From assembly GCF_002113885.1 (NCBI RefSeq), contig NW_018404728.1:147539-211538 (forward strand): a stretch of DNA of 64,000 nt, given 5' to 3'. The first letter of the stretch is position 1. Each line of letters begins with the position of its first letter. The notes under the pieces were generated by a model. That model had not been told where the DNA came from and made no database searches. It was given only the letters and a program-made list of their open reading frames with translations. This document shows, in pieces, positions 40,802-63,955 of this stretch. A program made the position numbers and the translations under genes. Source of the stretch: Mizuhopecten yessoensis (Eukaryota).

Positions 40802-40949
40802 TCACACTGCTCCCGTGTGTTGGACATACTGGTCCAGAGCGCCAGTAGCCTGCATGGCGAATGCTGTAGATATACCACCAGCAAACATGGCCGGGACAGC
40901 AATGAATGATAACCACGCCAGCAGACCCATCCCTGACAACCCGTGACCA
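40802..40949 (-). CDS. YeeE/YedE-like last coding exon
   Basis: Acceptor ttacag|TGGTCAC; GHGLSGMGLLAWLSFIAVPAMFAGGISTAFAMQATGALDQYVQHTGAV*. Confidence 0.9.
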
Positions 40950-43900
40950 CTGTAACCAAGGCAACGAATTAATTAGATTTACAAATATACATGTAAACAT
41001 ATATAAAAACAAGCAAACAAGTTTGACATTAAGGTACTGAGACTTATATTATAGATAACCACATAAATGCTTCTTTATGTACTTCCTCCCTAGAGTCAAG
41101 AAAAGTGCATGGGTACGGAAAACGCGCATGACTAAATGGGAGAGAGGCCGAAATTTACCTTGTACATCCTGCGCCAAGGCGAGCCCCAAACAGGAGCAAG
41201 AAGCCTCCAAAGAACGCCACCGGGAGTTGTGGCCCTTTACTTGTCGTCAGAGTGTCCGAGGCCACGCCGGACAGGCAGGCGCCCAACACCACAAACGACA
41301 CGAAAAACACCTGCAAATGGGAGATAGTCACAACTTTATTTTTTTTGTTATTCTATACATGTTAACATATCAAAAGCTCATCGAGACTATTTTTGTTTCC
41401 ATTTAACAACACACGCCATTTACAACACTCACCTGCCACCAGTTGCCAACACCTGATCTTTTATTCGCCAAATATGGAAATGTCCGGGACAGCTTGTCCG
41501 TTATGACCCATTGGGAAACTATGGTGACGTAACTGCTGCTGCCACCTATCGTGTCCTTGACCACTAACACCAGGGGGAGCTGTAGTAGGCCAACTATGAT
41601 ACCTGTAGAAGATATTGAATACAAATACATTAAATTAAGTGTACTTTACTCCACTATAGGTAACGTCATTAATCTTCATTAAAATGTTATTAACATTTTC
41701 TTAACTAATGACAGTCTGTGAATGAGGCCCAATAGGGTTAATGTGACGAAGATGATAATTGGCTGGCGCGGTGTATAATGCACTCGCCTTTCAGTGTAAA
41801 CTTTGGTTTCCTCCATATCAAAACCCACTGCTACGTACATGTACCATCAGGGTCAACAAGACGGATTGATATGGCCTTTTTATCTTGTTTCATAATTGTT
41901 GTAAAGTCCACACAATATTTATCGTTTTTAGTGTCAGCAGGTCCTTCCCTTAACTATAATAAGTTCTGTCAATTGAAAAAATAAAACAAAACAATATTGA
42001 TTTGAATGTCGATTATGTAATAATTGTAACAAAAGTCATCCAAAATCTAGGATAAACAGTTTATACCACCTTGATCTAAAACCAGTGTCTAGCCATGATT
42101 ATACTATACGTGTTGGTTGATTAAAGTGTAGTTACTTCCCCTTGGCCATATACAAATGTACACATGTACAGCTAGAGCCTGTTCGTTTATCCGGAACAAC
42201 CGTTTTGAAATGTAACATTTTCGGGTATAAATACTGGTGGACCTGCAAAAGTTTATGCAGGCCTTGCAATGCTTTGCCAATGCTTGCCTGAAAGCAACAT
42301 CAGATTATTGGGTCCGACCTTATTTCATAAACGATCAAATCTGGTTTAACCGTTTGGACGGCGATAAACAAAACGGCTCAAGTCTTTTTCACTCTATATT
42401 TATTGTTCATGTGTGAACTGGGATTGACCTTAGAGTTACAAATACAATTATAATGCATTTTGAAAACGGTCATAGAAACAGTTTCATGAAGAGCATTTCA
42501 TGTGAAATTTGATTATGTTGCTGTCCAGTTACTGCAGCGTATGTAAGCTGAAGATAACTATGTTAACAAACGTACTGCTCATTGATTTTAAATATCATAG
42601 AAATCAACTTAGCTTAGCATTTGATTTTTGCTTTAATTGGTAGCATATTTTCTAAATTATGATGACGTCACCAATCAATGACTTTTAATCAGTATGACGT
42701 CAACAATCATACGACGACCTTTCGAGAATTAGTTTAGGTTTTGATCCCTCCTTAAACTTTTGTGATTTTAGCGTGTTTCTTACCTGTGGCGTATGGCGGC
42801 CACGACACAGCAGTGACGATATTGACACCTGCTGGGTTTTCTCTCTGTAACAGAAACGTAAAATGATTATATAACCACGTGATTATATTATATTTGTAAT
42901 TTGACTTTAAATGAGTATTTAACAATTTGAATCAGTCGTCTACGTATCTACTGATTTTTCTACCAGACCGATCACTTTTGTCGGAAAAATTGTAAAATTG
43001 ATAAATAGGCACCTATCAACCCTCTTTTTAATCTCACCGTAATAACATAATAAAACGTTAGGCGAAAAATCAATGACAATATCGAGTTACTGACGATCAA
43101 TTATTTTTGTCGGTAGGTTTATTTGCGCGCATTCGTCATAACTTAATCTGTTACATGAGCCGGTGGTGACAGTGACCAGGATAACCAGATGGTCTGGTGA
43201 TGTGTGCGATATGTATTTGCCGTCAAGTTAAAGTAGACTTCTACAAGCTCAAAAATATGTGCCGTAGTACATGCTTACCCCTATAGAAACGAGGTCCTTG
43301 TTCCACGGCCAAAACCATTCTATCAGGACCACGATCACCGTCATTAGCAGAGCCATGGGGAGGGCCAGGGCAACATACGGTTTGTCTAGTGATGTGTGCA
43401 CACTGAAACACGTGACGGGTCATGTGTATTTAATAGGATTTAATAGGATATTAGTGGACGCAGGCATTGCTGCCTCTATATCAACATCAATATAGTTTGA
43501 AATACATTGTGGAAAACATAAAATAAGCCTTTATATAAGGCGCTGTATCCAGAATTCGTCCAAGTTTTGCTTGAAGTCAAATACGTTACTAGATGAAAGA
43601 TGTAGAAAAATTAAACTGCAATCAACCATCAGAACAGATCTTATGATTGAAAATATTAAGCAGCTGAAATAACACGGCCAATATATCATTTTTATGGTTT
43701 TGCCTCACCTATCCTTGAAGGGAGATATATATGTAAATTCTTAATGAGACTATACAACTAATTCCGATATATTTATACAATGTATCATAACAAAGGATTA
43801 AATGTCCATGTGAAGTAAGTAAATATAGAAAAAATAAGATCTAACAAACGACTAAAAAACTAGCTGCTTTCTCCCTTTGCAGGGCACTTCAGGTTTATTG

Positions 43901-46654
43901 TTTATCACAATGTATTATATTTATTGCCCATTTCACGGGATTATTCTAAAGTAACACAGCTCAGACTGAATGTAATAAAGGATTCTGTATATCACACTGA
44001 ACGTACTGTGTCCATGTGTAAGCAGTCTTTGGCTTGGTCAGTCTGGAGAGAAATGGGTCAAGCAGGCCGTAGGATAATGCGCCGAGGAAGACTCCAAGTA
44101 GACTGAAAACTGACCATGCAAGAGGTTCGTTAGTGGCATTTGTATGTTTGTTAATAAAACAGACCTTAAACATTCGTCAGTAACATTTACAATAGAAATA
44201 ATTACAAATGTGCTTATATTATTGTTAGAACTATACACAGAATTTGGATATTACTAATTTTAAAAATAATACTAAAACAAATCTTCGGAATGATAAAAGA
44301 AAAAGAAACAGCGAATACTTGTTTTCGTAAGCTTCTCCAATATGCAGAGTAGTGTATCACAATGTTGAATTGTACATTTGTTTCATGTGAGAACCTCTTC
44401 ATTTTGAATTTTATCAAATCACATTTTCGTAGATTTATGCAGATGTTATCACGCGGTCAAGGTTGTCAGCTATGAAACATATACTTACTTGCATTAGGGA
44501 CCCAAGCACCTATCTGTGCTAGTATCATACCGGGACACTGCAGTGTGAAACATAGCGCATGTAAGATATAACATTTTTATATTACAGCACATACTCTTTT
44601 ATTATAGAAAAAAATAACGTATTCACATTAAAAAATATAATCTTTCATTATAAAATTCAACGTATTCAATACAAACATGTAACATCAACGAGGACGTAAA
44701 ACACATTATTAAATGGCTTTTACTCAATCATGTAATATAACATAACGACATAATAAATCATAACATATTCTCATTATAAAGTGTGATTTATTCCCATTGT
44801 AAAATATTATATACTCGAACGATTACGTTTAACAATGGTACTTGTAAACGTTTTAAGCAGAATATGACAAGCGTTATCCATTGTCCCCAACTCTATGGAC
44901 ATTCACTGTGGCTTTCTGCAACTATCTCAACACAGAGAGTGAGATAATATTACTCCCCGCTACAGATAAACGAGTGTGATATTCTATTACTCAATTCTAC
45001 AGATAAACGAGCGTGATATTCTATTACTCAATTCTACAGATAAACGAATGTGAGATTCTATTACTAAGTGAGTGCGAGATGATATTACTCACTCCTACAA
45101 GTAAACGAGTGTTAGATCATATTACTCAATGCTACTGAAAAACGAGTGTGATATTTTATTACTCAATGCTACATATAAGCGAGTGTGAGATCATATTACT
45201 CAATGCTACTGAAAAACGAGTGTGATATTTTATTACTCACTCCTACAGATAAACGAGTGTGATATTTTGTTACTCAATGCTACAGATACGCGAGTGTGAT
45301 ATTCTATTACTCAATGCTACAGATAAACGAGTGTGAGATTCTATTACTCAATGCTACAGATAAACGAGTGTGAGATTCTATTACTCAATGCCACATATAA
45401 TCAAGTGTGATATTATGTTACTCGGTGATACATACATTGCTATTAATCATCGTTTCAAAGATTAAATATGATTTGATGATAATCATCGCTCTAGACAAAA
45501 TAGTATGAGATTATGTTACCCAACGCTCCAGTTATAAGAGTTTGAGATTCTATTACTCACCGATCCTGCCATGGTCATCCCGATTCCCAGGATTATGGGG
45601 CCGAGGATACTGGTGAGGATCCCCTTTTCTCGTAAGCAGGATATGAAGTCGTGTATAGCGTCGTCAAAATAAGGCCTGGTCTTAGGAATGGCCGCCAACA
45701 CAACGAAACAGAGCTGGCCTGGAAAGGGAGGTAACTCTTTGTAAAGGATATATTAGTATACTACCTGTTTCTTTTATTTTCATAAAACGAACTCTTTAAT
45801 AACTAAGGTATCAGGTTTACTGTATACATAGCTACCAGGAAGCACTTAACATTATTACTATTTATAGTTTTCCATAACGAAATGGTAAAATAATTTATTC
45901 GGATTGGCACATACGAATAATAAATATGTATTTTTAATCTTGATTTTTTTTTATTGATGGTTAAACATTTTTAATTAAACATTTCCGAAAATTTTAGTTA
46001 CTGAAAATTACACAAAATGTGGACAAAATGTTTGTTCATATAAACAATAGATTGTATAAGTGTCGTTTTTAAATGAACACATAGAACTGTAGTATGTTCT
46101 ATGTTTCCATATGGAGAATAGTCACAATCATTGTAGCATTGTTTAAGGGGAGGTAAGTCGCATGCAACCCAAACTCCTGTCGAGAATACTTATCTAAGGT
46201 GAGATTAATCGCCTGTCGACCAGTTAGCTAGTCAGAGAGAAAAAAAATAACATACATTTGTTTTAAATGAGAGACAAAGGTATGGAGGGGGCTTAATTAC
46301 AGGCACCCACCCTGTTCCAAGGACGCTTGCCAAAGTGGAGAGACAGCTTATTTGCGAGAAGGGACTTATTGGCGGTTAATTACGGTAATATCATGTCGAT
46401 AATTGACTTTACGCGAATAGATCGTTTTCAGGGATTTTTAAAAGTAAATCAATTATCTGTGAACCCTTTAAAAAAGGGGAGGGGGTAATAAACCGCTTGT
46501 AGATTTATCTAATATACTCATAATTGTGTAAAGAATTACCTAAAAGAATATTTAAGGTATTCAGACTTACCCGAGGCGACTGCTGCCAAAAACACCTTCA
46601 GCATGATGAAGTTTTCAAACACCATCTGTTGCCGTATCACTACTGGCTCAAAAA
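40802..46654 (-). CDS. YeeE/YedE-family (TsuA-like) sulfur-compound membrane transporter, spliced gene, 5'-incomplete. Exons 46571-46654, 45561-45718, 44489-44537, 44007-44109, 43279-43402, 42784-42844, 41433-41602, 41159-41310, 40802-40949.
   Basis: Spliced ~349 aa with no internal stop: VFEPVVIRQQMVFENFIMLKVFLAAVASG...ILGIGMTMAGSCPGMILAQIG...SWPPYATGIIVGLLQ...TIGGSSSY...WWQVFFV...FFGGFLLLFGARLGAGCTSGHGLSGMGLL...AMFAGGI. The two pseudo-symmetric G-x-GM-x-x-AG-x-C-PG and FGAR-x-x-x-GCTSGHG signatures are diagnostic of the family. All 8 introns are GT-AG and phase-consistent. Confidence 0.92.
41159..41310 (-). CDS. YeeE/YedE-like exon
   Basis: Acceptor ttgcag|GTG; VFFVSFVVLGACLSGVASDTLTTSKGPQLPVAFFGGFLLLFGARLGAGCTS; donor AAG|gtaaat. 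Confidence 0.9.
41433..41602 (-). CDS. YeeE/YedE-like exon
   Basis: Acceptor ctacag|GTATC; GIIVGLLQLPLVLVVKDTIGGSSSYVTIVSQW...GNWWQ; donor CAG|gtgagt. Confidence 0.9.
42784..42844 (-). CDS. YeeE/YedE-like exon
   Basis: Acceptor ttacag|AGAG; RENPAGVNIVTAVSWPPYAT; donor CAG|gtaaga. Confidence 0.85.
43279..43402 (-). CDS. YeeE/YedE-like exon
   Basis: Acceptor tttcag|TGTG; VHTSLDKPYVALALPMALLMTVIVVLIEWFWPWNKDLVSIG; donor GGG|gtaagc. Confidence 0.87.
44007..44109 (-). CDS. YeeE/YedE-like exon
   Basis: Acceptor ggtcag|TTTTC; FSLLGVFLGALSYGLLDPFLSRLTKPKTAYTWT; donor CA|gtacgt. Confidence 0.85.
44489..44537 (-). CDS. YeeE/YedE-like exon (49 nt, carries the conserved Cys)
   Basis: Acceptor ctgcag|TGTCCC; CPGMILAQIGAWVPNA; donor AA|gtaagt. 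Confidence 0.9.
44935..45423. repeat. 37-bp minisatellite, ~13 copies, intronic in the YeeE-like gene
   Basis: Unit TACAGATAAACGAGTGTGATATTCTATTACTCAATGC. Confidence 0.92.
45561..45718 (-). CDS. YeeE/YedE-like exon
   Basis: Acceptor ttccag|GCCAG; QLCFVVLAAIPKTRPYF...ILGPIILGIGMTMAGS; donor TCG|gtgagt. Confidence 0.9.
46571..46654 (-). CDS. YeeE/YedE-like exon (most 5' exon identified)
   Basis: Acceptor ttacag|TTTTTG; FEPVVIRQQMVFENFIMLKVFLAAVAS; donor CGG|gtaagt. Confidence 0.88.
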
Positions 46655-46990
46655 CTGTAATGATAAAATAGCAAATACCGTAAGTTAAACACATGGGGAA
46701 GACCGAAAGTCCTTTGAATAGACTGGTTGAAGGAGTATATAAATTAAAACCAATAACATTTTGAACTGAGAGAAAGTTCAAAACTGAATTCAAAATGTAG
46801 AAAACCCGTTAAATTAAAAACTTGTTAAACTACTCATTCTGTTTAATTTCTAATACAATATTTTTCTAGTGTATATCATCGGCATAGAATAAACAGAAAA
46901 ATGGATGTTGTTATAATGTTTACAATAAAACAGGGTGCCTCCAACATGAAATGCCATTAACGCCCTCAAAATACACCAGGGGATATTTTC

Positions 46991-47210
46991 AGGGTGGCTT
47001 CAGGGCAAGTGCAGCGGATAGTGGGTTCGATACCCCGATCGGACGTGAAAAGGCATGTGGTCACCTGCCCGACCGCGTGGGTTTTCTACGAGTACTCCGG
47101 TTTCCTCCTACATTAAAACCACCCGCGCTAACATCCGGGCCAACAAGAGGGATACATATAATTAGAAATAACTTGTTTCATAATTGTTGTAAAACAAATA
47201 AAGTTTATTA
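46991..47210 (+). mobile_element. tRNA-derived SINE (same family as 4230-4472)
   Basis: GGTTCGATACCCCGATCGGACGTGAAAAG...GGGTTTTCTACGAGTACTCCGGTTTCCTCC...TGTTTCATAATTGTTGTAAAA-AATAAAGTTTATT. Confidence 0.8.
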
Positions 47211-48427
47211 TATTAATGTCAAAGAGAATGGACCAATTCGCAAAACCTGTTTGCAAACACGTAAACCTGAATTTGGGATTTATTTGTCGTAAGCAACTTA
47301 CACATTGTTGCATATAATATATTCTCCTTTTTTATTTGAATTTAATGTAAGGTATCGAAATGGCCTACACTGACAGCTAACATTGGCATTGAGACTGCAA
47401 TGCAGGTTCTTAAACAATCCTACCTCTCCTTTTCTATAGATCTACTCAATGGCTATTTGTACCGATATTGTATGATACTATATAAATACATGTGTCTATG
47501 TGTTTGCATTATGTAATGTATGTATTGTATACCAATGTAAATATTCGAAATATAAAAAATGAAAACACGGATCTCCGACGTACACACCGCCACTGGGACG
47601 TTCACCAATGGTAGAGATATGTCGCCCTGCTGTAAGACGAACTATATAGGTCAGTCTGGGTAATGTACCCACGGATACACTGTACCCGGGCCGGTGGTTT
47701 AAAGATAGCACAGCTTAACATCAGTGATGGAAGTAATCTTAAATCATTGAAACATACTAAAATTAATTACAAACACTACACGTACAGAGTGATATCCATT
47801 AATAATAGCTAATGAAAGGATGATTGAACAATTTGAAGGAATTTCTGAAATGTCATTTCGACATTTTGAGTTAACGATGTGTGTTAAGCTAATTTAGATC
47901 TGAACGACAAGGCCCATATCTCAGACATTTAAATCCTAAATTCATTTAAATCAATAACATCTTACCCCGTATAACATTTTCAGTTTGTTCTATTATGCAT
48001 TTATAGACATCGCTTACCTACATGTAAATATAATTCCTTTTATACTACCGTTTAATATGTCTCATAAATATAAGATATATGTAGATGGCATTATGCAAGG
48101 TCGTGATATGTTTTTTAGTCTGTCGTATAATCATGTCACGGTCTTATTCTCGCCGAGATAAACATTGTCGTCTGACGGAAAAGCATGTCGCGACCTTAGT
48201 CTGGCCATTTGTCTGTTTGTTTTGCGTCTTATTAACAGTAATGGTCATTGATGGACGTGCCAGGTTTTGGTGGTGGAGGAAAGCTGGAGTTCCCGAAGAA
48301 ACACCACCGACCGAAATGCTGGACAACAATAACAAATTTTACAATGTAGATGACAAAGAAACGTATGAGATCAAAACACATTCACTAACCATAGACCGGA
48401 TACATGTTATGGTAGCGTTTGGAGACA

Positions 48428-50942
48428 TTCACAGTAGGTGTTATGTTAGACTTTAGCTGTGGTATCTGTCTGGGGTAAAGCTATGTAGTGGAGTGACTGA
48501 CAAACACTGTAGTATCTGTCTGGGGTAAAGCTATGTAGTCGAGTCACTGACAAACACAGTAGATGTAATGTTAGACTTTAGCTGTGGTATCTGTCTGGGG
48601 TAAAGTTATGTAGTGGAGTCACTGACAAACACTGTAGTATCTGTCTGGGGTAAAGCTATGTAGTCGTGTCATTGACAAACCCAGTAGGTATAATGTTATA
48701 CTTTAGCTGTGGTATCTGTCTGGGGTAATGCTATGTAGTCGTGTCAAACACAGTAGGTGTGATGTTAGACTTTAGCTGTAGTATCTGTCTGGGGTAAAGC
48801 TATGTAGTCGAGTCATTGACAAACACAGTAGGTATAATGGTATACTTTAGTTGTGGTATCTGTCTGGGGTAAAGCTATGTAGTCGTGTCACTGACAAACA
48901 CAGTAGGTGTTATGTTATACTTAAGCTGTGGTATATGTCTGGGGTAAAGCTATGTAGTCGAGTTACTGACAAACACAGTAGGTATACTGTTAGACTTTAG
49001 CTGTGGTATCTGTCTGGGGTAAAGCTATGTAGTCGAGTCATTGACAAACACAGTAGATGTAATGTTAGACTTTAGATGTCGTATCTGTCTGGGGTAAAGC
49101 TATGTAGCCGAGTCACTGACAAACACAGTAGGTATAATGTTTGACTTTAGCTGTAGTATCTGTCTGGGGTAACGCTATGTAGTCAAGTCACTGACAAACA
49201 CAGTAGATGTAATGTTAGACTTTAGCTGTGGTATCTGTCTGGGGTAAAGCTATGTAGTCGAGTCATTGACAAACACAGCAGATGTAATGTTAGACTTTAG
49301 ATGTCGTATCTGTATGGGGTAAAGCTATGTAGTCGAGTCACTGACAAATACAGTAGATGTAATGTTAGACTTTAGCTGTAGTATCTGTCTGGCGTAAAGC
49401 TATGTAGTCGTGTCATTGACAAACACAGTAGATGTAATGTTAGACATAAGATGTCGTATCTGTCTGGGGTAAAGCTATGTAGTCGATTCACTGACAAACA
49501 CAGTAGGTATAATGTTTGACTTTAGCTGTAGTATCTGTCTGGGGTAAAGCTATGTAGTCGAGTCATTGACAAACACAGTAGGTATAATGTTAGACTTTAG
49601 ATGTCGTATCTGTCTGGGGTAAAGCTATGTAGTCGAGTCACTGACAAACACAGTAGATGTAATGTTATACTTTACCTGTAGTATCTGTCTGTGGGTAAAG
49701 CTATGTAGTCACTGTTAAACACAGTAGGTGTAATGTTAGACTTTAGCTGTGGTATCTGTCTCGGGTAAAGCTATGTAGTCGTGTCACTGACAAACACAGT
49801 AGTATCTGTCTGGGGTAAAGCTATGTAGTGGAGTCACTGACAAACACTGTAGTATCTGTCTGGGGTAAAGCTATGTAGTCGTGTCATTGACAAACACAGT
49901 AGATGTAATGTTAGACTATAGCTGTGGTATCTGTCTGTGGTAAAGCTATGCAGTCGAGTTACTGACAAACACAATAGGTATAATGTTATACTATAGCTGT
50001 AGTATCTGTCTGGGGTAAAGCTATGTAGTCGTGTCATTGACAAACACAGTAGATGTAATGTTAGACTATAGCTGTGGTATCTGTCTGTGGTAAAGCTATG
50101 CAGTCGAGTTACTGACAAACACAATAGGTATAATGTTATACTATAGCTGTAGTATCTGTCTGGGGTAAAGCTATGTAGTCGTGTCATTGACAAACACAGT
50201 AGATGTAATGTTAGACTATAGCTGTGGTATCTGTCTGTGGTAAAGCTATGTAGTCGAGTTACTGACAAACACAGTAGGTATAATGGTATACTATAGCTGT
50301 AGTATCTGTCTGGGGTAATGCTATGTAGTCGAGTTACTGACAAACACAGTAGGTATAATGTTATACTATAGCTGTAGTATCTGTCTGGGGTAATGCTATG
50401 TAGTCGAGTTACTGACAAACACAGTAGGTATAATGGTATACTATAGCTGTAGTATCTGTCTGGGGTAATGCTATGTAGTCGAGTTACTGACACACACAGT
50501 AGGTATACTGTTATACTTTAGCTGTAGTATCTGTCTGGGGTAAAGCTATGTAGTCGAGTCATTGACAAGCACAGTAGGTATAATGTTAGACTTTAGATGT
50601 CGTATCTGTATGGGGTAAAGCTATGTAGTCGAGTCACTGACAAACACAGTAGATGTAATGTTATACTTTAGCTGTGGTATCTGGGGTAAGGCTATGTAGT
50701 CGAGTCATTGACAAACACAGTAGATGTAATGTTATACTTTAGCTGTGGTATCTGGGGTAAAGCTATGTAGTCGAGTCATTGACAAACACAGTAGATGTAA
50801 TGTTATACTTTAGCTGTAGTATCTGTCTGTGGGTAAAGCTATGTAGTCACTGTTAAACACAGTAGGTGTAATGTTAGACTTTAGCTGTGGTATCTGTCTC
50901 GGGTAAAGCTATGTAGTCGTGTCACTGACAAACATAGTAGGT
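48428..50942. repeat. 75-bp minisatellite (with 50-bp truncated variants), ~33 copies
   Basis: Unit GTATCTGTCTGGGGTAAAGCTATGTAGTCGAGTCACTGACAAACACAGTAGGTATAATGTTAGACTTTAGCTGTG. Confidence 0.97.
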
Positions 50943-51364
50943 ACATCAACAGCAATAACGAAGGAAAAAGTGTTTAATGGAAAAGGAACATGAATAGATA
51001 TCCTAGGCATAACAAGGATGCAGCACAATGATCCAGAGGCAAGTATCAGATGATTTTCAAATTTTATTGGGAAGGGGGAGGGATTTTCAAATCGGAACAA
51101 AAGGAGAAAATACATGATATTCAATGATAATTCCAAGACTGAAGCATTGTTCTGAAGCCCTGAAAACCATATGGCTCCGCCACAGCAGCAGCTAAAATAA
51201 AATATGTTTGATATTCACAGAAAATGGACTAAGACACTCGATTTGACAGGAAAGCCTCTTTAACAGTTGCCCTGGTCTATTACGCAGGGGGAAAGTCGGG
51301 CAACATCCCCCTCGAAACAAATGGGTTAAACCTAAAGAAATCCATCGTTCCGTAATATACACAT

Positions 51365-52144
51365 CATACATTGCCATCGTCTATGTAAACAACCATACAT
51401 TGCCATCGTCTATGTTAACAACCATACATGTCCATCTTCTATGGAAACAACCATACATTGCCATAGTCTATGTAAACAACCATACATGTCCATCTTCTAT
51501 GGAAACAACCATACATTGCCATAGTCTATGTAAACAACCATACAATGCCATCGTCTATGTTAACAACCATACAATGCCATCGTCTATGTAAACAACCATA
51601 CAATGCCATCGTCTATGTTAACAACCATACATGTCCATCTTCTATGGAAACAACCATACATTGCCATAGTCTATGTAAACAACCATACATTGCCATCGTC
51701 TATGTAAACAACCATACATTGCCATCGTCTATGTAAACAACCATACATTGCCATCGTCTATGTTAACAACCATACATTGCCATCGTCTATGTTAACAACC
51801 ATACATTGCCATCTTCTATGTTAACAACCATGCAATGCCATCTTCTATGTAAACAACTATACAATGCCATAGTCTATGTTAACAACCTTACAATGCCAAA
51901 GTCTATGTTAACAACCATACAATGCCATCGTCTATGTTAACAACCATACATTGCCATAGTCTATGTAAACAACCATACATTGCCATCGTCTATGTAAACA
52001 ACCATACATTGCCATCTTCTATGTTAACAACCATGCAATGCCATCTTCTATGTTAACAACCTTACAATGCCAAAGTCTATGTTAACAACCATACAATGCC
52101 ATCGTCTATGTAAACAACCATACATTGCCATCGTCTATGTTAAC
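51365..52144. repeat. 29-bp minisatellite, ~27 copies
   Basis: Unit CATACATTGCCATCGTCTATGTAAACAAC. Confidence 0.96.
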
Positions 52145-53804
52145 ACATAGTAAGCGTCGCCTGAGCTGTTTTGTTGTTTTTATCTGAGTTATAAACTAAC
52201 TTTTTGTTATTTGACACTAGCATTACCTAACTGCAAATATGTGGTTGATAGTTTCAGTGTGCAATTCCACCGGATAACATAAAGACCTGGAACGCAGTAA
52301 TTGATAATGACAACATGAAAGTGTTTGAGTGCTCAAAGTAGGAAACAAAATGAAATATTTGTAACTTTTAGATGTATATCTGCTTTCCATACCCAACATT
52401 TTTAAGAAACATATCAATTCATACACAAAACAACTCATACTGTCGAAGTAGATGTATAAAGTGTCGTAATGACATGTATTAGTCACTGAAAGTTTACTTA
52501 AGTTGGTATCTATTTCTCAACATAAACAAAAATATCGTTAGATGATTCACCGTGTCACACGCTACAAACTGACAAGGTCGCAAATCACTGGACCGTGAAC
52601 GTATTGTTTTCATCATATGCATTTCCCTCTATTTGTCAAGAAACACGCGATACACAATACACGCTAAGCCTTCATAGCAAATAAGCGATAAGAAGTTTTG
52701 TTGCATACAAAAAAGTGAATGCATTACATTAACATTTGAGACTAAGAAAATAGCATAACATAGATTGAACAGAACCATGAAGAATATGGAAGTCAATATC
52801 ACTGATCTCGCACCTGCATTATTAGATGTGAAATAGTTTGCTTCTGTCCAAATACACGCCATGGGTGACCCTTATCCAACAGAAATGAGTTTAACACAAG
52901 TTATAATTATTCTAACACCGATATCGTAATAAAGACATGGAAAATCTCTTTGGCTGGATTTCAAAATGTTGTTTACGTCCTCTGGCATTTCCAAAGGTAT
53001 CTCGTTGATTCGACTACGCATGACATGGTGTTCAGATTAGTTAGTGACTCTGACCTTTGACTTTCATGTCTCTATGCTCAGATAATAATATCTGTGTTCG
53101 TGATTGGTTGTATCCACCGATACATACTCACTGGTAACTACCAACGGATTGATGTTCGTTTCTATATTAGCAAACCATTTACGATAAAACGTGCACAGAT
53201 CGGCCACTGACGAATTACTCCTCCTACCCGTCTATACTTCGAATCATGTATGTAGTACAGAAAATGTTCGCATTCAACATAGCAAAACTCAATATACAGA
53301 GCGAGGGACTGTATGCATACTGGAAATAATTGTCAATTAAAACTTAAAGTGAAGCTGTTTTTAACAATAATTCTCTGTTTATTTTTTTTTTACAAAATAA
53401 AGCATTAAGATATGGACTGATAATGAGATGTAATTGACAATATCGTGAACATGTACCCGGTAACATGTTATCAGCCCATGTATCTAACAAGGGACTTTAG
53501 TGCAGTGTAGCGAATGTGAGTGCAGTGTAGCGAATGTGGAAGATCACTGCTATGCCGTGCCACCAGAGACAGAAACTTTCCATATATGAAATCCTTACCT
53601 CTTACGATAATTGTGCAAATTATAATGATTCATCCAATGTTCCCTAATGCTACTTATAATCTGTAGTGAGTCAACCAATTATATTTTTGATGTAAAGAGT
53701 AAACTGAGTATGCTATCTTATTTAAAATACGAAAAAATGGTACTTCAAAAATATGTTTTGTCTTTCTTCTGCAACAAATTTATGGGGTTAACTTTAATCA
53801 GCTT

Positions 53805-53875
53805 GTCAGTCAGTCAATCTGTCTGTCTGTCTGTTTGAAGTCTGAATCTTGTCCTGTATATATAGTAAACTCATA

Positions 53876-53920
<45 letters not shown>

Positions 53921-54085
53921 TTGAAGTCTGAATCTTGTCCTGTATATATATAGTAAACTCATATATGTCTGTCTGTCAGTTTGTAGTCTGAATCTTGTCC
54001 TGTATATATAGTAAACTTATATCTGTCTGTCTGTCTGTCTGTTTTGTAGTCTGAATCTTGTCCTATATATATATAGTAAACTCAT
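53805..54085. repeat. Compound repeat: (TCTG)n plus a ~40-bp constant block, 4 copies
   Basis: AGTCTGAATCTTGTCCTGTATATATAGTAAACTCAT separated by variable-length TCTG runs. Confidence 0.9.
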
Positions 54086-55202
54086 TCCATTAAAGCGGGC
54101 GTGCTTGTTGAAGATTGTATAGGGCGAGGTAGCTGTTACTGTATAGATCGATTAATATTATCTATTCATGTTAACTAACCTGCTTGAACTGATATGTGCA
54201 TTTAGGCTTACTTGTTATAGTGATAGATAGTTCTATGTTGATATCATCTAATTGGTGTGTTTTAAAACTATTACGACCTTGTCTGCGATGTGCGCATTGA
54301 AGTACTACATTGGGAGCGTATAGTTGTCCAGCTACAGATCATTAACTGTTGCTCAAACGTTCAGTGAAAACATTTAATAACTCGTAAATTGTTTGTAAAA
54401 TAAAAAACGTTATGGTTCTTAAATATTTCATATAAAGTAAAGATAACGACATTCAAAGCAATCACTTATTGTAAAAATAGTTTATTGTCATAGTAACCAA
54501 ACCAAACTTCTTTTTGCATGCTGTTATCTATTTCGGTTGTATTGGAATTATGACGAATGTAAAAAAAGATAAGATGTTTTGTTTCCTAAAATATATAGTC
54601 CTACAATGTGATTTCTCAAATACACACAAATATATGTGTTGCCAAAAGAGGAAATTCATGTAAGCTTCATGTGCGTTAAGGGTTTAAAGGGAAAAAGAGC
54701 AAATTACCCAACAATCTATATAATTTGTGATAATTGGTTTAACATTTTGGATATCTATCTGTTTACATATATATACACGTATGACATTGCTGTTTGGGTG
54801 TTTCAGCAGCATGATGATGATATGTATCAGAGATTTTCAAATGTATGCAAATTGAGCTCACAACGTTTTTCCATTCATGAAAACTTAACCTTAGCCACAG
54901 TGAATAGCTCCATTAGTAATACAGCTAAAAATGAAATAAGACCAGGTCGAAAAATTAAACTCTTATTTTATAAACAGACCATTTGTTACCTGGTGGAATA
55001 CCTATAGATAAATAAAAGATAAAGTCGTTACTTTATAGCCAGGTTTTTAAGGAGATCGATTGCTTCCATTGACCTTATTGATAGACATGTATAACATAAT
55101 TAATCCGATACGGTAGATAATTAATACTATAAGATAAAATCTCTGTTCCTTCAGCTTTAGTCATCATTTTCTATATTCTTAAATATCGCTGCTGTTCATG
55201 GT

Positions 55203-55348
55203 TCAAATTCAAATTGTTTTATTACTTTTGGCCTTACGGCCCATAAGTTCACATGCATAAATCAAGTATATTGCACAAAATCAAATTCAAATTATTTTAT
55301 TACTATGGGCCGTAAGGCCTAAAGTAATACAATAATTTGAATTTGAAT
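55203..55348. repeat. Nested inverted/direct repeat
   Basis: TTCAAATTCAAATT...TATTACTTTTGGCCTTACGGCCCATA (55203-55244) is inverted at ~55305-55348, with a partial direct copy at ~55281-55304. Confidence 0.75.
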
Positions 55349-55696
55349 TTCACATACATAATACAATTTTTAACAATAACATGGGATATTATGAAGGTTG
55401 GGATAGCTATACCTTTACAACATATATGAACATATGTATTTAATAGTGGAGATGTTATATTCCAGGCACAAACTTATAAGGTTCCTAGGCGGGTAGACGA
55501 GGCCGGTGTATGCATGTTTAATGGTCACCGTCCTCATCTCATTTACATATATCCCGTTTATTTATGACTGTCGATGTTTATTTATTATATTCACTTTCAC
55601 TTATATTCCTAGCATCGAGGACTTGACATGACTTAGGGTTATACTAGATCTACCCTGTTAAAATCTCTGATAGTCCAATTAGTCTTCTAATCTGTA

Positions 55697-55701
<5 letters not shown>

Positions 55702-55737
<36 letters not shown>
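55702..55737. repeat. (TA)n microsatellite
   Basis: Perfect TA run. Confidence 0.95.
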
Positions 55738-58700
55738 CTAGCTTATTGGTTCGGCCTGCCCTACATTGTATCTACCTAAACTTAATGTATTAAATCTTCA
55801 ATTTACATGCAGTATATGTTTGAAATGTATGTCTTTCTATATGGAAAGGGCTTTTATAGGCAATGCCTGTTCCCAATCCAATTGTTAATTGCAACAATAA
55901 AACATTTTGAAATGAATATTACTTTGGAAAGTAAGGAAGAAACTAAAAAAATATTCAGTAAGCCGATATAGAAAGCAACAATGTAATTATTTACTGTACT
56001 ATATGACCGTCATATGTACAAAGCCATTAAATCTTGTATGAAGTTGCACATTTACAAATTTCTGACTACAATGGTAATATATTTTTTCATAGTATTTCAT
56101 GCAAATGAAGTCAGAATAAATTTAATTCACTGTTACCATCATCATCATCAGATAAATGTGGTCCGTATGTACATTAATTAAACCTGTGATGTAATAAATC
56201 ACCAGAAAATGCAGTAAGGAAACACCTATCAATGTATTTATTAGTTGATATAGAACGCCAAACATAATATTCTTAACTAGATGTTTAATTGTTGCATGTC
56301 TTGGTCTGTTGGTCAATGGTATCCCAACACAGAATCGTACACGGACAATCGGTCTGTTCTGGCCTCCAGTCCGTGTCAGACGATCAGATGATATTATGAC
56401 ATTCCTTTTTAAACGATAGCAGTAATTTATAGATTCATTGTCCCTACTACATCTCACAATGCCACAGTTAAATGTTAAAAAACAAAACGTTGATAGATAT
56501 GTACATTAACATGATGAGTATGTACTGTTAATGGTTGTTAGAAGAAGGCTTGTATAGGCTATGCCTGTTGCCGAATTCCGATTGTACTTAAAAGATCTAT
56601 ACAATAAAATATTCGGAAATGAGAAAGCCAAACATAGCAAACTGTTACTGCACCATATGACCATATCGTCTGTTTAGAACTCAAATCCAACAAAAAACAT
56701 ACCTATATCTATAAGAGTCGGAAACATGTAACGGAATACAACGAATTACCTTTAAAGTCGTCAAAATGTAAAGAGCACCTTGAGAGTCCTATTACCACAA
56801 AGGTTATGCGAGTGAGGCACGCCTATAATATAATTACATTTTTTATAAAAGAATCAAACAGTACGCTATGAACCTTTATGTGAAAAGTACATGTATATGC
56901 AATTACCAACGCATTTGACAAAATAAAAATAAAACAAACTATCCCTACTTTTCCTCCTCTTCATTTATTGCACAATTAAACATTGTATCAAAACTATAAA
57001 ATCAATATGTGGTTCTCCCTTTGACAATTACATGAGAGGTATCAATAGCGTTACAAAGGTTGACCAGCTGTTTAAACAGTATTGAAGAACTTGCAAGTCA
57101 CGGAAGTAAATGTCGTACGCAGCGTAATGAAACATGGATTAGGGGATTAAAGGATTAGCAAAATAGCATATGTGATCTTAATACAATAACACCTCCCACC
57201 AGCATAACTAAGTTTACACCGATTTGTTCACGATGATCGTACGACTAGTTACGAACACTCGTAGGCATCCAAAATAATAAACGTTCAAAATGAAATTTAA
57301 CATGCCTCAATAATATTCGTTGAAATGTACATTACTAATAAATAGATGGCCAAAATAATGTACTTGCCCCTGTTTAAAAAAATGGTTTGCTCATAGAATC
57401 GCTAAAGTGTCGATTTACAGTCCTTGACTATACTATGTAATATCAGAATAAATGTTGTAAAATAAGATCGCCAACGGTGACATATGAGACACACAAATTG
57501 TTTGTTCATTTGTTTTTCTATTAAAAATAGAATTCTCTTAAATGCATGAATAGTGTACGCTTAATGACCTATTTAATTCTACCACTTTTAAATTATTCAT
57601 TTCGATAAAACATTCTACAAGACGCAGGGAAATTAAAACGTCACCATTTGCAGGCTCTTAGCATGCAAATTGTTTGATGAAAATCGCGAATTTCAAAAGT
57701 GCCTTTGACGACCACGAACAATCAATTGTCTTAACAAGATGACGTGTCCTTTCACGGTGAGTTATGCTTATTTATGGCGTCATTTGACGTTTAACATAAA
57801 AATAAAAATAAATGATTAGTACATCCAAAACAGCCTTGGTATAAGTGGTTTGGATATAATGTTTAACATAAACGCCCTATACCGCTTAAAGTGCTAATAC
57901 AATGGCAACCGTAATGTTTTTTTAAAAAGAATATAGCCTTTCTAGTTCTAACGAAACTTAGGTCATTATACCATAATGACAATACCTCAATGTGTTTGAG
58001 ATTATCTAATGAATTCAGTACTTATTGTCCAGCAATATTACCTTATTCATGTTTTCCCATATTAAGGAAAGTCCACATAAAGGCTAAATGTTCATATTTA
58101 GGTAATACATTGTTTAAGAATGCCCAAATGTGAACAATCACATATTAAGAAAAAAATATATTTACGTAATACTTTAAGTAAGAATCGCAATATAAATGTA
58201 ATATCTAATGAAAAAATATCCACATTTTGCTGCTCAATAGTAAGACATACACATAGTAGGCCTGACAATGTATAAATACGAAAGAAAATGTTTATTCATC
58301 GACATGCTATAAATCATTTCAATCATGCAATTTATTTCTATTTGATTCTAAGTTAAATTACAACTTTTTCTATACATCTTCATTACTCTGTTTGACATCC
58401 AATTTCGATAAAAGTTAATATCCTGTTACTGAAGCATACCTTATTCCTGACGGTTACATGTCTATAATTATTATATGGGTCTCTAAATGAGATTTCATAT
58501 TTCATGTCCACATAACAATTATTGTCGACGTAATTCCAATAGGACATTATTTTAGATCATGCCGAAAAAATGTTTGAATCAATGAATTTGTGACAGTTAC
58601 AAATCTAAGGAATAGTCTGTCATATAAATATCGCCAATTGAAGCGCTTGTTTATTCACTAGCGTTGTACCAAAATCAAAATATGACGAAAAAACAGAGTC

Positions 58701-61700
58701 ATACACAGCAAATAAGCCACTCTACGAAACGATGAGTGTGAAAATAACCTCTGCAGATTCAGAGAAGGAGTAGGCCTGTTGTAGCCCGCTGCATGATCAT
58801 GAGAAGCAATTAACGCTGCCCCCGTCCTTCAGAATCGGGGTTGGTTTCTTCCGTGTCTCCTGTTAATATACCTGCTATATTTCACTGTATGTGTATCGTA
58901 AGGGGAGGTAAATGAGGGACCCCCTGAAGTATCGATGATTTTGTTCCTTGTTTTCTACTAAGAGGAAATTAAGAAACCAATATTGATCAGTTCTATCATC
59001 TTTAATTCTGCGCCCATCTTTTCTACTGATCCTATGTATATACTTTCTCTTTACAGCAATGTTTCCCCAGGCACTCTTCATCATATGATTTATTAGTAAG
59101 CTGTTGCGAGGACGTTAAACCACGATAAAAAAGTAATGAGAAAATAAAATAATGTGACAGACTTATGACATATTATTATATGTACATCCCTGTCAAAATA
59201 GATTTAGTACCTTTATTCCTAATTGTATCCATACAATACTCACTAGAATTTATAACAGTTCATTAACCTATATCGACGCTGCGGTATTTTTATGACTTAT
59301 TTACTCGATCATAAATACCGTGTCAGCTATATGAGAGATACACGGACGAAAAGTTTAAACTCACAAACCGTAGTATTACATTGCGGTTTGTTATTTTCAT
59401 CACGAGTTACACAGAAAAAATATATGGAACACTAACAAGCAACTATCGTTTGATGTGATGGCACCTCAATGTTCCCTTTGGTTGTTCTCCTAATCCACTG
59501 TTGAAAGAACGTTAAATCCCTAACAAATCAATCCTCCTGATCAATGTAGACTGTCGTGTAAGAAATTCTAACCAATATCGTTTAAACATATTCCTGACAT
59601 GAATTATTAACATAAGTTATCTTATTGCCACACAACTAAATATATCCCCGTAGCATTAGTATTATCTACATTGTAAAACATATACCAAGTCTCCTTTTTA
59701 GTCACTTATCCTAGAGGCTGCCCGTATTCAACAAACAGAAAGACTTTTTTTCATATATATATACATATTTATTTTTAATTTAAAAAACCACAGTGAATGC
59801 ATCTTTAATTGTCAGAAAAATATATATCACTATACATATATAAATATTTAATACTGATCAACTGCTGACTCACTGCAGCCTATTGTCCTGTTAAGCCGTG
59901 TATTAACCTGTAATGACTTAATATGTAAAGAATTGTAATCAAACACCGACTATTCTTATATTGATCCATATGGGGTCGCCTTTATTACAAGGGATATGCC
60001 GATACACATTGTACCTAGTTATGTAGACGGAGTTGGCTACAGTCGTACCAGGCACAAGAGTTATTGATTAAATAGGCATTAAGAGGTGAAATCACGAGAC
60101 ATGTATAACCTCTATTGTTAATGGTGACAAAGGGAAATATAAAATGTTTTTACATTACACGGCTTTCGTATTTACTGCAATACATATATTTTTGTATCTG
60201 TTTTGTTAGGGAGGTTCTTCCACATCCCAGTATTACGTATTCAAGGTTCAGTACCCATATTAATACAAAATTCACTCATTTACAATATTGCGGTTAACGT
60301 TTATTCAATTTTTTTATATATCATTAATGCCTTTTTAAGTAGGATTTAATGAGGTTTTAAACACAATTTCTTTTCAAACACCTGCATCCTGGATATTACA
60401 TTTTTATCGGTGAACTATCATCCTAATAGAAGAATTACATTGAAAAAATAACAATATCAAGGCTACTTGTGTAAGAGTAGTGATCCTTGTGGATCTCTTG
60501 TAAAAAATGTCTTGTGTCAATTAAACATCTAGTCAGCTGACACATGTTTGTGTCAATCACAGTGTCAACGTCTTGTCGGATATCATTGTTGTGTCAATTA
60601 AGCATCTATTTATAGTGCACATATTGATGCGTCAATCCGTTAATTGACACTTTGCTGTCTCTATCAAGCTCCTAGTCAGTTGCTGACAGTTAACACTCGG
60701 ACTTGTGTTACCTGTGAGCACGAGGATATTAAGTTTCATGGTTCGCACGTTTAATGCGATTCCAAGCCAGATTATGATATTAAAAGAGATTAATATTGAC
60801 GTATATAGCTAACACTATGCTATTAAACAGTGGGTAAAGCGATAATACAATGTCATTTAACTCGCACCTTATGATTTCGGTCTTGTTTGATCGTTGCCGA
60901 TAGATTAAGAAAAAACTATTTGCTTGCACAATGGAATTCTAAATAACAATTTTTAACACGAATTCATGGTTCATAAGTTATCGATCTTGGAATGTCGCCA
61001 GTATATTTCGACACACCATAAGCATTGAAGTACTTATAATAAAATATAAATATGAATATTTATTTTTATTTTTCATTTCCCTTTACTGACGGGATACGTT
61101 TTTCAAGTAAAAGATACTGCAAATAACGTAGTATATTCGATTGTATGACAATGACATCTGGAGATAATAGGGCCGTCCAAGAGATAAATCATAATTACAT
61201 TTTACTACAACATCATAGCCTGAATACGGTAGCATGCTACTCAATCAGGTCACAATATTCTGACAATGGGTTAAAATGTGCATGGGGACACAGAATAGTG
61301 TAAGGGGTAAATATAAAATAAGAAATGAGAAGACATCAGTTTCAGATCAACATCTTTCATTTCAATACATGCAAAAGACAAGTTGAAATACAAGCTCCAA
61401 TTCAATAGCGAATTGAAATTTAGTCGCCCCGACAATCATGCATTTGGATATAGCAGGTAATTTTATGCAGTCCAATATGACTTACGATAGTTGATTAAAC
61501 CTCAACTTATAATAACATCAAAACAAACAAAAAACGTAAGGAAGACAATTTTAAAACCCATTCCTTTAAAGTAATATCTTTCTATAAGTAGAATTTATTA
61601 TTATATCCATACAAATTACATATATTTTATGCCACAGGTGGTTGACACTAACGATTGACCAACAGATTTTGAAGTTGGCCGTAATCTTAGAGTTCATGAT

Positions 61701-63784: not shown

Positions 63785-63955
63785 ATTTCACACGGTGATT
63801 CACTCTGATTGTAGACGTTTACTTGTTGCTGCAGTTTATATCACACGGTGATTCACTCTGATTGTAAACGTTTACTTGTAGCTGTAGTTTATTTCACACG
63901 GTGATTCACTCTGATTGTAGACGTTTATTTCACACGGTGATTCACTCTGATTGTA
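63785..63955. repeat. Tandem repeat, 4 copies
   Basis: Recurring TCACACGGTGATTCACTCTGATTGTA. Confidence 0.85.

What the first reader, a model, noticed from the sequence alone, without database searches (positions are those of the whole stretch)
40802..46654. Intact, intron-rich animal gene for a YeeE/YedE (TsuA-like) thiosulfate/sulfur transporter
Seen: nine phase-consistent exons, largely missed by the ORF track, encode a multi-TM protein with AGSCPG and GARLGAGCTSGHG motifs. Established: YeeE/YedE proteins are characterised in prokaryotes, where E. coli YeeE/TsuA imports thiosulfate via conserved cysteines with the TusA-like partner YeeD/TsuB. I know of no mammalian member or functional study in animals. 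Inference: this invertebrate has a dedicated sulfur-species transport route, possibly for thiosulfate from sulfide detoxification, sulfur or selenium uptake, or microbial interaction. Eight canonical introns with host repeats argue against contamination and for ancient retention or old horizontal transfer.
Basis: partly seen in the sequence, partly recalled or inferred. Interest (0 to 1): 0.75.

Follow-up and report, generated by a model that had tools for sequence, protein, structure and literature searches.

The report
Scallop YeeE-family sulfur transporter gene
This is a real, expressed scallop gene for a membrane protein of the bacterial-type YeeE/YedE sulfur-transporter family. It is already in public databases, it is shared by many marine invertebrates, and what it does in animals is still untested.

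Summary

The first coding exon (ATG and first membrane helix) lies 26.2 kb upstream, outside the window. The full CDS has 10 exons and encodes 425 aa.

The gene is not new. It is GenBank KP79_PYT00469 of Mizuhopecten yessoensis, whose deposited model skips one 61-nt exon. Named orthologues ("YeeE-like", "TsuA-like") exist in molluscs, annelids, brachiopods, bryozoans, echinoderms, hemichordates, amphioxus and choanoflagellates.

Six of the nine intron positions match sea star and amphioxus exactly, with the same phase, and two more lie near by. dN/dS against Pecten is 0.11. This supports vertical descent from the bilaterian ancestor and excludes contamination and recent transfer.

The orthologue's predicted fold matches only YeeE among solved structures. 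It is not a TsuA equivalog (42 bits against cut-offs of 400 and 645), and it lacks the first of TsuA's three cysteines. Its nearest bacterial relatives found are split PmpA/PmpB-like gene pairs, mostly alphaproteobacterial. No TusA/YeeD partner was found, but those searches were insensitive.

Substrate, direction and membrane are unknown.

The parts
46571..46654 (-). It enters in phase 1 from the out-of-window ATG exon at L001:8890-9118 minus.
   Evidence: AG acceptor and GT donor. RNA contigs join 45717/8 to 46570/1 and run on into the upstream exon (loose end at 46656).
45561..45718 (-). Coding exon 3, aa 105-157. It ends in 'GMTMAGS', the first half of the AGSCPG loop.
   Evidence: Joints 44537>45561 and 45717>46570 in X1, X10 and X21; GT-AG.
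44489..44537 (-). Coding exon 4 (49 nt), 'CPGMILAQIGAWVPNA'. It carries Cys158, the equivalent of StYeeE Cys91.
   Evidence: Joints 44109>44489 and 44537>45561. Cys158 is invariant in 74 eukaryotic homologues and aligns to C91 of 6LEO.
44007..44109 (-). Coding exon 5, aa 174-207, a membrane helix.
   Evidence: Joints; weak Sulf_transp hit; tblastn to homologues.
43279..43402 (-). Coding exon 6, aa 208-249, the central membrane helix.
   Evidence: Joints 42844>43279 and 43402>44007.
42784..42844 (-). Coding exon 7 (61 nt), 'RENPAGVNIVTAVSWPPYA'. The deposited GenBank model omits it.
   Evidence: Joints 41599>42781 and 42844>43279 in X1 and X10 contigs, and in 5 and 4 X21 reads. P0205 lacks it. 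It is present in the Pecten and Ylistrum orthologues.
41433..41602 (-). Coding exon 8, aa 270-326, 'DTIGGSSSYVT...GNWWQV'.
   Evidence: Joints. As a query it retrieved 177 homologues.
41159..41310 (-). Coding exon 9, aa 327-376. It ends in 'GARLGAGCT' and carries Cys375, the equivalent of StYeeE Cys293.
   Evidence: Pfam Sulf_transp 29.4 bits on this piece alone. Joints. Cys375 is invariant and aligns to C293.
40802..40949 (-). Coding exon 10, 'SGHGLSG...HTGAV', with the stop codon at 40802-40804. The 3' UTR continues below 40802.
   Evidence: Joint 40948/9>41159 in X1 and X10. The X1 contig runs past 40760.
42160..42360 (.).
   Evidence: At least 2,766 first-look candidates in the genome, 82-87% identical. 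Very high depth in the RNA runs, unrelated to the gene.
44960..45423 (.). 37-nt minisatellite inside intron 3 (between 44537 and 45561).
   Evidence: Tandem Repeats Finder, 9.6 + 2.9 copies.
46655..64000 (-). In-window part of the 26,235-nt first coding intron. It holds the tandem arrays at 48430-50943 and from 51365.
   Evidence: Upstream exon located at L001:8890-9118. No candidate first exon in the window. Arrays.

Best explanation
An intact, transcribed, vertically inherited gene of the Yesso scallop (GenBank KP79_PYT00469). It has 10 coding exons over about 32 kb and encodes 425 aa. The protein is a polytopic membrane protein of the YeeE/YedE (Pfam Sulf_transp) superfamily.

It belongs to a eukaryote-wide clade of single-chain proteins that correspond to the two halves of bacterial PmpB (N-half) plus PmpA (C-half) type pairs. 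Its nearest prokaryotic relatives found here are such split pairs, almost all from Alphaproteobacteria.

Shown: the gene structure, its expression, purifying selection, and family membership. Also shown: the close orthologue's predicted YeeE fold, and invariance of the two cysteines (Cys158, Cys375) that match the indispensable Cys91 and Cys293 of the solved YeeE.

Inferred: it forms an hourglass-shaped pore in which a small sulfur species (thiosulfate, or sulfane sulfur/polysulfide) is handed between the two cysteine-bearing loops across a membrane. It would do this without the third, cytoplasmic cysteine of TsuA, and probably without a TusA-type partner.

The substrate, the direction and the membrane are not known. 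I rate thiosulfate specifically at about 0.3.
For: Splicing and expression.

The deposited protein P0205 is identical to my model apart from one exon, and it sits on a contig of 245,949 bp, the length of C1401.

The Pecten maximus orthologue has 425 aa, the same nine intron positions and phases, and a 26.2-kb first intron; dN/dS is 0.108.

Pfam Sulf_transp: 29.4 bits on one exon, and 131.6 bits on the 81%-identical orthologue P0194.

AlphaFold model of P0194: pLDDT 89.5, pTM 0.86. Foldseek hits below E 0.001 are only the YeeE entries 6LEO, 6LEP, 8K1R and 8J4C, with target-normalised TM-score up to 0.76.

Cysteine mapping. Tanaka 2020 (PMC7449682) reports that C91A and C293A abolish StYeeE function while C22A does not.

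Bacterial relatives are split in two ORFs, 44% and 40% identical to the C-half and N-half. All 59 pairs are in C-then-N gene order and form one group apart from the eukaryotes.

The PmpAB description comes from Li 2024 (PMC11582611).

Intron conservation with sea star and amphioxus.
Against: No transport assay exists for any eukaryotic member.

E. coli YeeE needs all three cysteines, so loss of the first could mean a different mechanism or substrate.

The set of bacterial relatives was fetched with one peptide motif (GCTSGHG[LI]S), which biases it towards look-alikes.

Gene neighbourhoods of the bacterial pairs are heterogeneous. Only 8 of 144 neighbours are SQR/FCSD-type flavoproteins, 4 are CsoR/CstR-type repressors and 3 are metallo-beta-lactamase-fold proteins, so they say little about substrate.

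The fold was predicted for the Pecten orthologue, not for the window's own joined protein.
Confidence: 0.85

Rival explanations
1. It is a functional equivalent of bacterial TsuA (YeeE): a thiosulfate importer for sulfur assimilation that works with a TusA/YeeD-like cytoplasmic partner.
For: Same superfamily and same fold. NCBI's automatic name for orthologues is 'thiosulfate transporter TsuA-like'. The two cysteines indispensable in StYeeE are kept.
Against: The NCBIfam TsuA models score 42.5 and 40.5 bits against cut-offs of 400 and 645. The Cys22/Cys25 equivalent is Phe78, and that cysteine is essential in E. coli YeeE. E. coli TsuA sits on a branch of length about 10 from the whole eukaryote plus split-pair group. 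No TusA-family or TsuB match was found in the scallop genome, although the family search also missed the known gene, so this negative is weak. From general knowledge, animals do not assimilate inorganic sulfur into cysteine.
Confidence: 0.12
2. It is a YedE-type selenium-compound transporter.
For: Weak similarity to the YedE models (TIGR04112, E 1.5e-4). Selenium and sulfur species are chemically alike, and a YedE-like protein is linked to selenium transport in Methanococcus (PMC11582611).
Against: 21 bits against a cut-off of 200, and the hit covers only one half of the protein. No YedF/TusA-like partner was found.
Confidence: 0.04
3. It is bacterial contamination, a recent horizontal transfer into the scallop, or a decaying pseudogene.
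For: The family is mainly prokaryotic, and the protein is 40-44% identical to alphaproteobacterial proteins.
Against: Nine GT-AG introns containing host repeats. Spliced mRNA in several studies. It lies on a 246-kb host contig. Introns are identical to Pecten and mostly shared with sea star and amphioxus. The tree follows animal phylogeny. The 425-codon frame is open and dN/dS is 0.108.
Confidence: 0.01

Closest known systems
PmpA/PmpB-type split YeeE/YedE pairs (Serratia PmpAB; the alphaproteobacterial two-gene pairs found here, e.g. Tepidicaulis marinus L058:3983-4507 and 4523-5098)
   Same: Highest bacterial identity: 44% to the C-half and 40% to the N-half. One conserved cysteine per half, at the Cys91 and Cys293 positions, and no Cys22 equivalent. 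The shared motifs RVFEP...FIMLKVFL, ACPG, GNWWQV and GCTSGHGLS.
   Different: The scallop protein is one chain in N-half then C-half order. All 59 bacterial pairs are two genes in C-half then N-half order. The scallop protein also has a roughly 50-aa disordered acidic N-terminal tail. The alphaproteobacterial halves (about 175 and 190 aa) are longer than the roughly 130 aa quoted for Serratia PmpA/B, and their N-half already carries the central helix. No PmpAB protein has a solved structure or a defined substrate.
TsuA/YeeE thiosulfate transporter (E. coli b2013; Spirochaeta thermophila, PDB 6LEO, 8K1R)
   Same: Same fold, and the only significant structural match (TM-score 0.73-0.76 on the target). 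Same single-chain N-half, central helix, C-half layout. Cys91 and Cys293 equivalents are kept.
   Different: Only 16-18% identity in the structural alignment. TsuA equivalog scores are missed by a factor of ten or more. The first conserved cysteine is replaced by Phe. No adjacent or detectable TsuB/YeeD partner. It occurs in an animal, which by general knowledge does not assimilate thiosulfate.
SoxT1A/SoxT1B of Hyphomicrobium denitrificans (YeeE-like sulfane-sulfur importers and signal transducers)
   Same: Same superfamily, an alphaproteobacterial setting, and a proposed cysteine-mediated passage of sulfur.
   Different: SoxT proteins are described as having three conserved cysteines and sitting in sox/shdr loci (PMC11582611). 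I did not compare them directly because no SoxT sequence was fetched.
RefSeq invertebrate proteins 'UPF0394 inner membrane protein YeeE-like' / 'thiosulfate transporter TsuA-like' (e.g. Pecten maximus P0194, Ylistrum balloti P0192)
   Same: True orthologues: 80-81% identical, 425 aa, colinear. Intron positions are identical in Pecten, the one orthologue whose gene structure was mapped.
   Different: None of substance. They are equally uncharacterised.

Membership tests
Pfam PF04143 Sulf_transp (YeeE/YedE superfamily) | Score at or above the gathering cut-off (27 bits) | tested here: met
   The exon piece 41158-41352 alone scores 29.4 bits. The 81%-identical colinear orthologue P0194 scores 131.6 bits over profile positions 2-309 of 310. 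The joined protein itself was not submitted.
Pfam PF04143 Sulf_transp (YeeE/YedE superfamily) | YeeE fold: two homologous halves with re-entrant loops around a central helix | tested here: met
   AlphaFold model of P0194, pLDDT 89.5. Foldseek matches below E 0.001 are only 6LEO, 6LEP, 8K1R and 8J4C, at probability 1.0. This was tested on the orthologue, not on the window's own sequence.
TsuA/YeeE thiosulfate transporter (NCBIfam NF041049, NF052577) | Score at or above the curated cut-off (645 / 400 bits) | tested here: not met
   40.5 and 42.5 bits for P0194; 18.4 and 39.1 bits for the deposited scallop protein P0205.
TsuA/YeeE thiosulfate transporter (NCBIfam NF041049, NF052577) | Three conserved pore cysteines (St C22, C91, C293; Ec C25, C94, C302) | tested here: not met
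   C91 corresponds to Cys158 and C293 to Cys375, both invariant in 74 eukaryotic sequences. C22 aligns to Phe78 of 'RVFEP'.
TsuA/YeeE thiosulfate transporter (NCBIfam NF041049, NF052577) | Essential TusA-like partner TsuB/YeeD | tested here: inconclusive
   No match to PF01206 or to E. coli TsuB in the scallop genome. The six-frame family search also missed the known Sulf_transp gene, so absence is not shown.
TsuA/YeeE thiosulfate transporter (NCBIfam NF041049, NF052577) | Thiosulfate uptake activity | not testable with these tools
   Needs complementation or a proteoliposome assay.
PmpA/PmpB-type YeeE/YedE proteins | One conserved cysteine per half, at the Cys91 position (N-half, PmpB) and the Cys293 position (C-half, PmpA), and no third cysteine (Li et al. 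2024, PMC11582611) | tested here: met
   Cys64 in helix 1 is not conserved: Gly in most homologues.
PmpA/PmpB-type YeeE/YedE proteins | Two separate short polypeptides (about 130 aa, four helices each) forming a presumed heterodimer | tested here: not met
   The scallop protein is one 425-aa chain that includes the central helix. The nearest bacterial relatives are two ORFs of about 175 and 190 aa. It is therefore best called a fused PmpB-PmpA-like protein, not a member in the strict sense.
YedE selenium-metabolism membrane protein (TIGR04112, NF033796) | Score at or above the curated cut-off (200 / 350 bits) | tested here: not met
   21.1 bits for TIGR04112. No hit to NF033796 for the animal proteins.

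The most novel reading that the evidence does not exclude
The eukaryotic YeeE-like proteins would be an independent fusion of an alphaproteobacterial PmpA/PmpB-type gene pair, in permuted order. They would possibly be of mitochondrial-endosymbiont heritage and separate from the fusion that gave TsuA/SoxT. In aquatic and sediment-dwelling invertebrates the protein would move a product of mitochondrial sulfide oxidation (thiosulfate, or persulfide/polysulfide sulfur) across a membrane. That route would then have been lost in vertebrates and other lineages. No vertebrate, arthropod or nematode is among the 120 best hits listed, but the list is truncated.
Probability: 0.2. Interest if true: 0.55.

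Novelty: already known. Interest (0 to 1): 0.3.

Why it matters
Animals detoxify sulfide to thiosulfate, and how these sulfur species cross membranes is, to my knowledge, poorly defined. This family is conserved across bilaterians and under strong purifying selection (dN/dS 0.11). It keeps the two essential pore cysteines of a bacterial thiosulfate transporter, which makes it an obvious untested candidate. Its presence as at least two old paralogues in many invertebrate phyla makes it testable in oysters, sea urchins or amphioxus.

The gene itself, its family assignment and its occurrence in eukaryotes are already public, so the finding is not a discovery.
- a corrected gene model (the ATG exon 26 kb upstream, and the 61-nt exon missing from the GenBank entry);
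- evidence that 'TsuA-like' is a loose name, since the protein is a fused PmpB/PmpA-type protein lacking the third cysteine;
- intron evidence for bilaterian ancestry;
- a near-exclusively alphaproteobacterial set of closest split-gene relatives.

Tried and rejected
- **Family search of the whole genome.** A six-frame search of the scallop genome with PF04143 returned nothing although the gene is there. The equally blank TusA (PF01206) and E. coli TsuB searches therefore cannot show absence.
- **First exon by similarity.** A motif scan and a small HMM of homologue N-termini run against all six frames of the window found nothing. The apparent tblastn extension upstream of 46654 is spurious. The exon is outside the window and was found only through the RNA loose end.
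- **Word-index search with the N-half alone** (P0194:55-250), meant to rank bacterial half-proteins without motif bias. It gave 346 candidates and four hits, none with a useful name.
- **Metagenome hits taken for bacterial relatives** (P0249, P0250, P0252). These turned out to lie on eukaryotic-looking contigs carrying RRM, Patched/sterol-sensing and TdIF1 genes.
- **Neighbour tally around 36 bacterial pairs.** The result was heterogeneous, with only a minority of sulfide-oxidation genes, so it is not used as functional evidence.
- **Rfam scan of the gene region.** Nothing found.
- **Literature searches for any animal study** ('UPF0394', 'thiosulfate transporter TsuA-like', YeeE with mollusc and echinoderm terms, PF04143). 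None found; the one oyster paper concerns a Vibrio PmpA-like gene.
- **Joined protein.** The joined 425-aa protein was never sent to a database, family, structure or fold tool.
Full report
**1. What is in the sequence**

Refined to GT-AG boundaries, the exons are 46571-46654, 45561-45718, 44489-44537, 44007-44109, 43279-43402, 42784-42844, 41433-41602, 41159-41310 and 40802-40949. The stop codon is at 40802-40804.

The AGSCPG motif is split by the exon junction at 45561/44537. The GARLGAGCTSGHG motif is split at 41159/40949. The piece 41158-41352 alone passes the Pfam gathering score for Sulf_transp, at 29.4 against 27 bits.

**2. Transcription and splicing**

Twenty public runs from nine studies hold part of the stretch. 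Fourteen RNA-type runs hold 13-30% of its sampled words, roughly what the exons contribute.

I laid four runs on 40760-46759. A 1293-nt contig of X1 and a 1404-nt contig of X10 (recorded as RNA-Seq) contain all eight junctions, each with CT..AC ends on the + strand, which is GT..AG on the gene strand. Raw reads of a transcriptome run (X21) support seven of the eight. A second raw-read run (X24) covered only intronic repeats, so expression differs between samples.

**3.

Position 46654 follows a 'ttacag' acceptor and enters a codon in phase 1. No candidate for the missing N-terminal helix exists in the window.

The X1 contig continues for 100 nt beyond 46656. The 30 nt of that loose end that the tool reported occur once, at L001:8892-8921, in the next 10 kb of the same contig. 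There an ATG at L001:9118, preceded by an in-frame stop, opens a 229-nt exon. It encodes a 50-residue acidic, Ser-rich tail and the first helix, 'CGVIFGIALEKTR', and ends at a GT donor.

The first coding intron is 26,235 nt. Joined inside my scripts only, the ten exons give 1278 nt, which is 425 codons plus the stop, with no internal stop.

**4. A note on method**

Those steps used exon pieces by reference, the deposited protein P0205, or the orthologue P0194. Pfam and folding of the window's own joined protein are therefore left out. The joined CDS was built from window.fa and L001 only inside local scripts. There it served for the frame check, local pairwise comparison, the intron map, the tree and dN/dS.

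**5. Identity of the gene**

A search with one exon piece gave full-length relatives, all of them Pfam Sulf_transp. A profile of 16 of them (A1) retrieved 300 proteins.

One of these is P0205, 'hypothetical protein KP79_PYT00469 [Mizuhopecten yessoensis]'. It has 421 aa and sits on a contig of 245,949 bp, exactly the length of the window's contig C1401. It equals my model except that it skips the 61-nt exon 42784-42844 and reads intron sequence instead. All RNA evidence includes that exon.

The Pecten maximus (P0194) and Ylistrum balloti (P0192) proteins have 425 aa, are colinear with my model, and are 81% and 80% identical. The Pecten gene has the same nine intron positions and phases and a 26.2-kb first intron. 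dN/dS between the two scallops is 0.108, with dS about 1.0. The gene is therefore functional, and it is already public.

**6. Distribution and descent**

Named hits come from these groups:
- bivalves and gastropods;
- annelids, brachiopods and bryozoans;
- echinoderms, hemichordates and amphioxus;
- the choanoflagellate Salpingoeca rosetta, and further protist transcriptomes.

Metagenome hits that I first suspected to be bacterial lie on eukaryotic-looking contigs. No vertebrate, arthropod or nematode name appears among the 120 rows listed, but the list is truncated.

I mapped the introns of the Asterias rubens, Branchiostoma floridae and S. rosetta genes:
- Six of the nine scallop introns fall in the same alignment column with the same phase in both sea star and amphioxus.
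- A seventh is shared with amphioxus and lies two columns away in the sea star.
- An eighth lies in a gappy stretch.
- The ninth (phase 1, after aa 104) was not found in the three non-scallop genes mapped.
- The choanoflagellate shares none of the positions.

A maximum-likelihood tree of 107 rows (quick search) places the model with Pecten and Ylistrum (support 100). These sit inside bivalves, inside a lophotrochozoan group (100), next to a deuterostome group. A second paralogue group also mixes protostomes and deuterostomes. The scallop genome has that second paralogue on contig C5586. This is vertical descent from at least the bilaterian ancestor, not contamination and not recent transfer.

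**7. What kind of YeeE-family protein it is**

The profile A1 matches the solved Spirochaeta thermophila YeeE (6LEO) at E 4e-14. In that alignment:
- Cys91 pairs with the ACPG cysteine (scallop Cys158).
- Cys293 pairs with the GCTSGHG cysteine (Cys375).
- Cys22 pairs with the Phe of 'RVFEP' (Phe78).

Cys158 and Cys375 are invariant in 74 eukaryotic sequences. Tanaka et al. 2020 report that C91A and C293A abolish StYeeE function whereas C22A does not, while E. coli YeeE needs all three cysteines (PMC7449682).

The NCBIfam TsuA models score 40-43 bits against cut-offs of 645 and 400, and the YedE model scores 21 against 200.

The AlphaFold model of P0194 is confident (pLDDT 89.5, pTM 0.86, with residues 1-45 disordered). 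Its only significant structural neighbours are the YeeE entries.

**8. Nearest bacterial relatives**

A scan of one genome per bacterial and archaeal species, using the motif GCTSGHG[LI]S, found 585 relatives. About 70 of the best 80 are Alphaproteobacteria by their record titles.

In these the region is two adjacent ORFs. The first (about 175 aa) is 44% identical to scallop residues 257-407. The second (about 190 aa) is 40% identical to residues 58-245, and includes 'FGFALEKSRVFEP...NFIMLKVFLTAVAVG'.

All 59 pairs that I could extract have this C-half then N-half order. They form one group (support 89) separated from the eukaryotes by a branch of about 1.0, while E. coli TsuA sits about 10 away.

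This is the arrangement Li et al. 2024 describe for PmpA (C-half, with the Cys293 position) and PmpB (N-half, with the Cys91 position), with one cysteine each (PMC11582611). The scallop protein is thus best described as a single-chain, order-permuted PmpB-PmpA-like protein. The automatic name 'TsuA-like' holds only at the superfamily level.

Two caveats apply. The motif-based fetch biases the bacterial sample, and the tree has a single, very long outgroup.

**9. Function**

Nothing here measures function.

The bacterial neighbourhoods are mixed. Of 144 neighbours of 36 pairs, 8 are Pyr_redox_2 flavoproteins (one locus has a flavocytochrome c sulfide dehydrogenase, another has two SQR-like genes). 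Four are CsoR/CstR-type repressors and three are metallo-beta-lactamase-fold proteins. The rest are unrelated.

No TusA/TsuB-like sequence was found in the scallop genome, but the method is too weak to show absence. The N-terminal tail is acidic and disordered. By general knowledge that is unlike a classical mitochondrial presequence, so the membrane is open.

My committed reading is a cysteine-lined pore for a small sulfur species, either thiosulfate or sulfane sulfur. I rate thiosulfate specifically at about 0.3.

**10. Novelty**

The YeeE literature already states that YeeE-like proteins occur in eukaryotes (PMC11073785). The gene is deposited, and orthologues are named. I found no functional study of an animal member in the held library.

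The finding is therefore an accurate reading of an already known but uncharacterised gene.

Noticed in passing
G000:C5586:19282-24003 (minus), outside the window: A second YeeE-like paralogue of the scallop. Seven exon-sized matches (30-56% identity) to the second oyster paralogue P0211. In the tree this paralogue group contains both protostomes and deuterostomes, so the duplication is old.
   Followed up: partly
window 42784-42844: The deposited GenBank protein KP79_PYT00469 (P0205, 421 aa) skips this 61-nt exon and reads intron sequence upstream of 41602 instead. RNA contigs, raw reads and the Pecten and Ylistrum orthologues all include the exon.
   Followed up: yes
window 42160-42360: Interspersed repeat in an intron, with at least 2,766 first-look candidates in the genome (82-87% identity). 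RNA depth is up to about 4,900, far above the gene's own exons. It has no Rfam match. Similar depth spikes occur at 43360-43559 and 43760-43959.
   Followed up: partly
window 48430-50943 and 51365-52000+: Large tandem arrays (75/225-nt unit, about 2.5 kb; 29-nt unit, at least 22 copies) inside the 26.2-kb first coding intron of the gene.
   Followed up: no
window 44960-45423: 37-nt minisatellite in the intron between 44537 and 45561. I did not evaluate that claim.
   Followed up: no
L003:673-3309, L005:722-3354 (marine metagenome contigs): In apparent picoeukaryote contigs the same Sulf_transp protein is fused to, or directly preceded by, a DUF442/BLH-phosphatase-like (PTP-like) domain. These are P0251 (719 aa) and P0252 (878 aa). 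In bacteria, by my own recollection, this domain occurs in sulfide-stress (Blh) proteins, so it is a possible functional hint.
   Followed up: no
L108 (Pecten maximus gene) against the window: The first coding intron is almost the same length in the two scallops (26,204 against 26,235 nt), although dS is about 1.
   Followed up: no
P0001 (Branchiostoma belcheri, 911 aa): A single scallop exon matches this protein in 11 stretches. It is probably a gene model that runs through tandemly duplicated copies.
   Followed up: no
window 45656 and 45593 (exon 3): RNA contigs of different studies carry T>A at 45656 and T>C at 45593. By my own codon arithmetic, not run through a tool, the first changes codon 126 (Ile) in a loop. 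These are presumably population polymorphisms.
   Followed up: no
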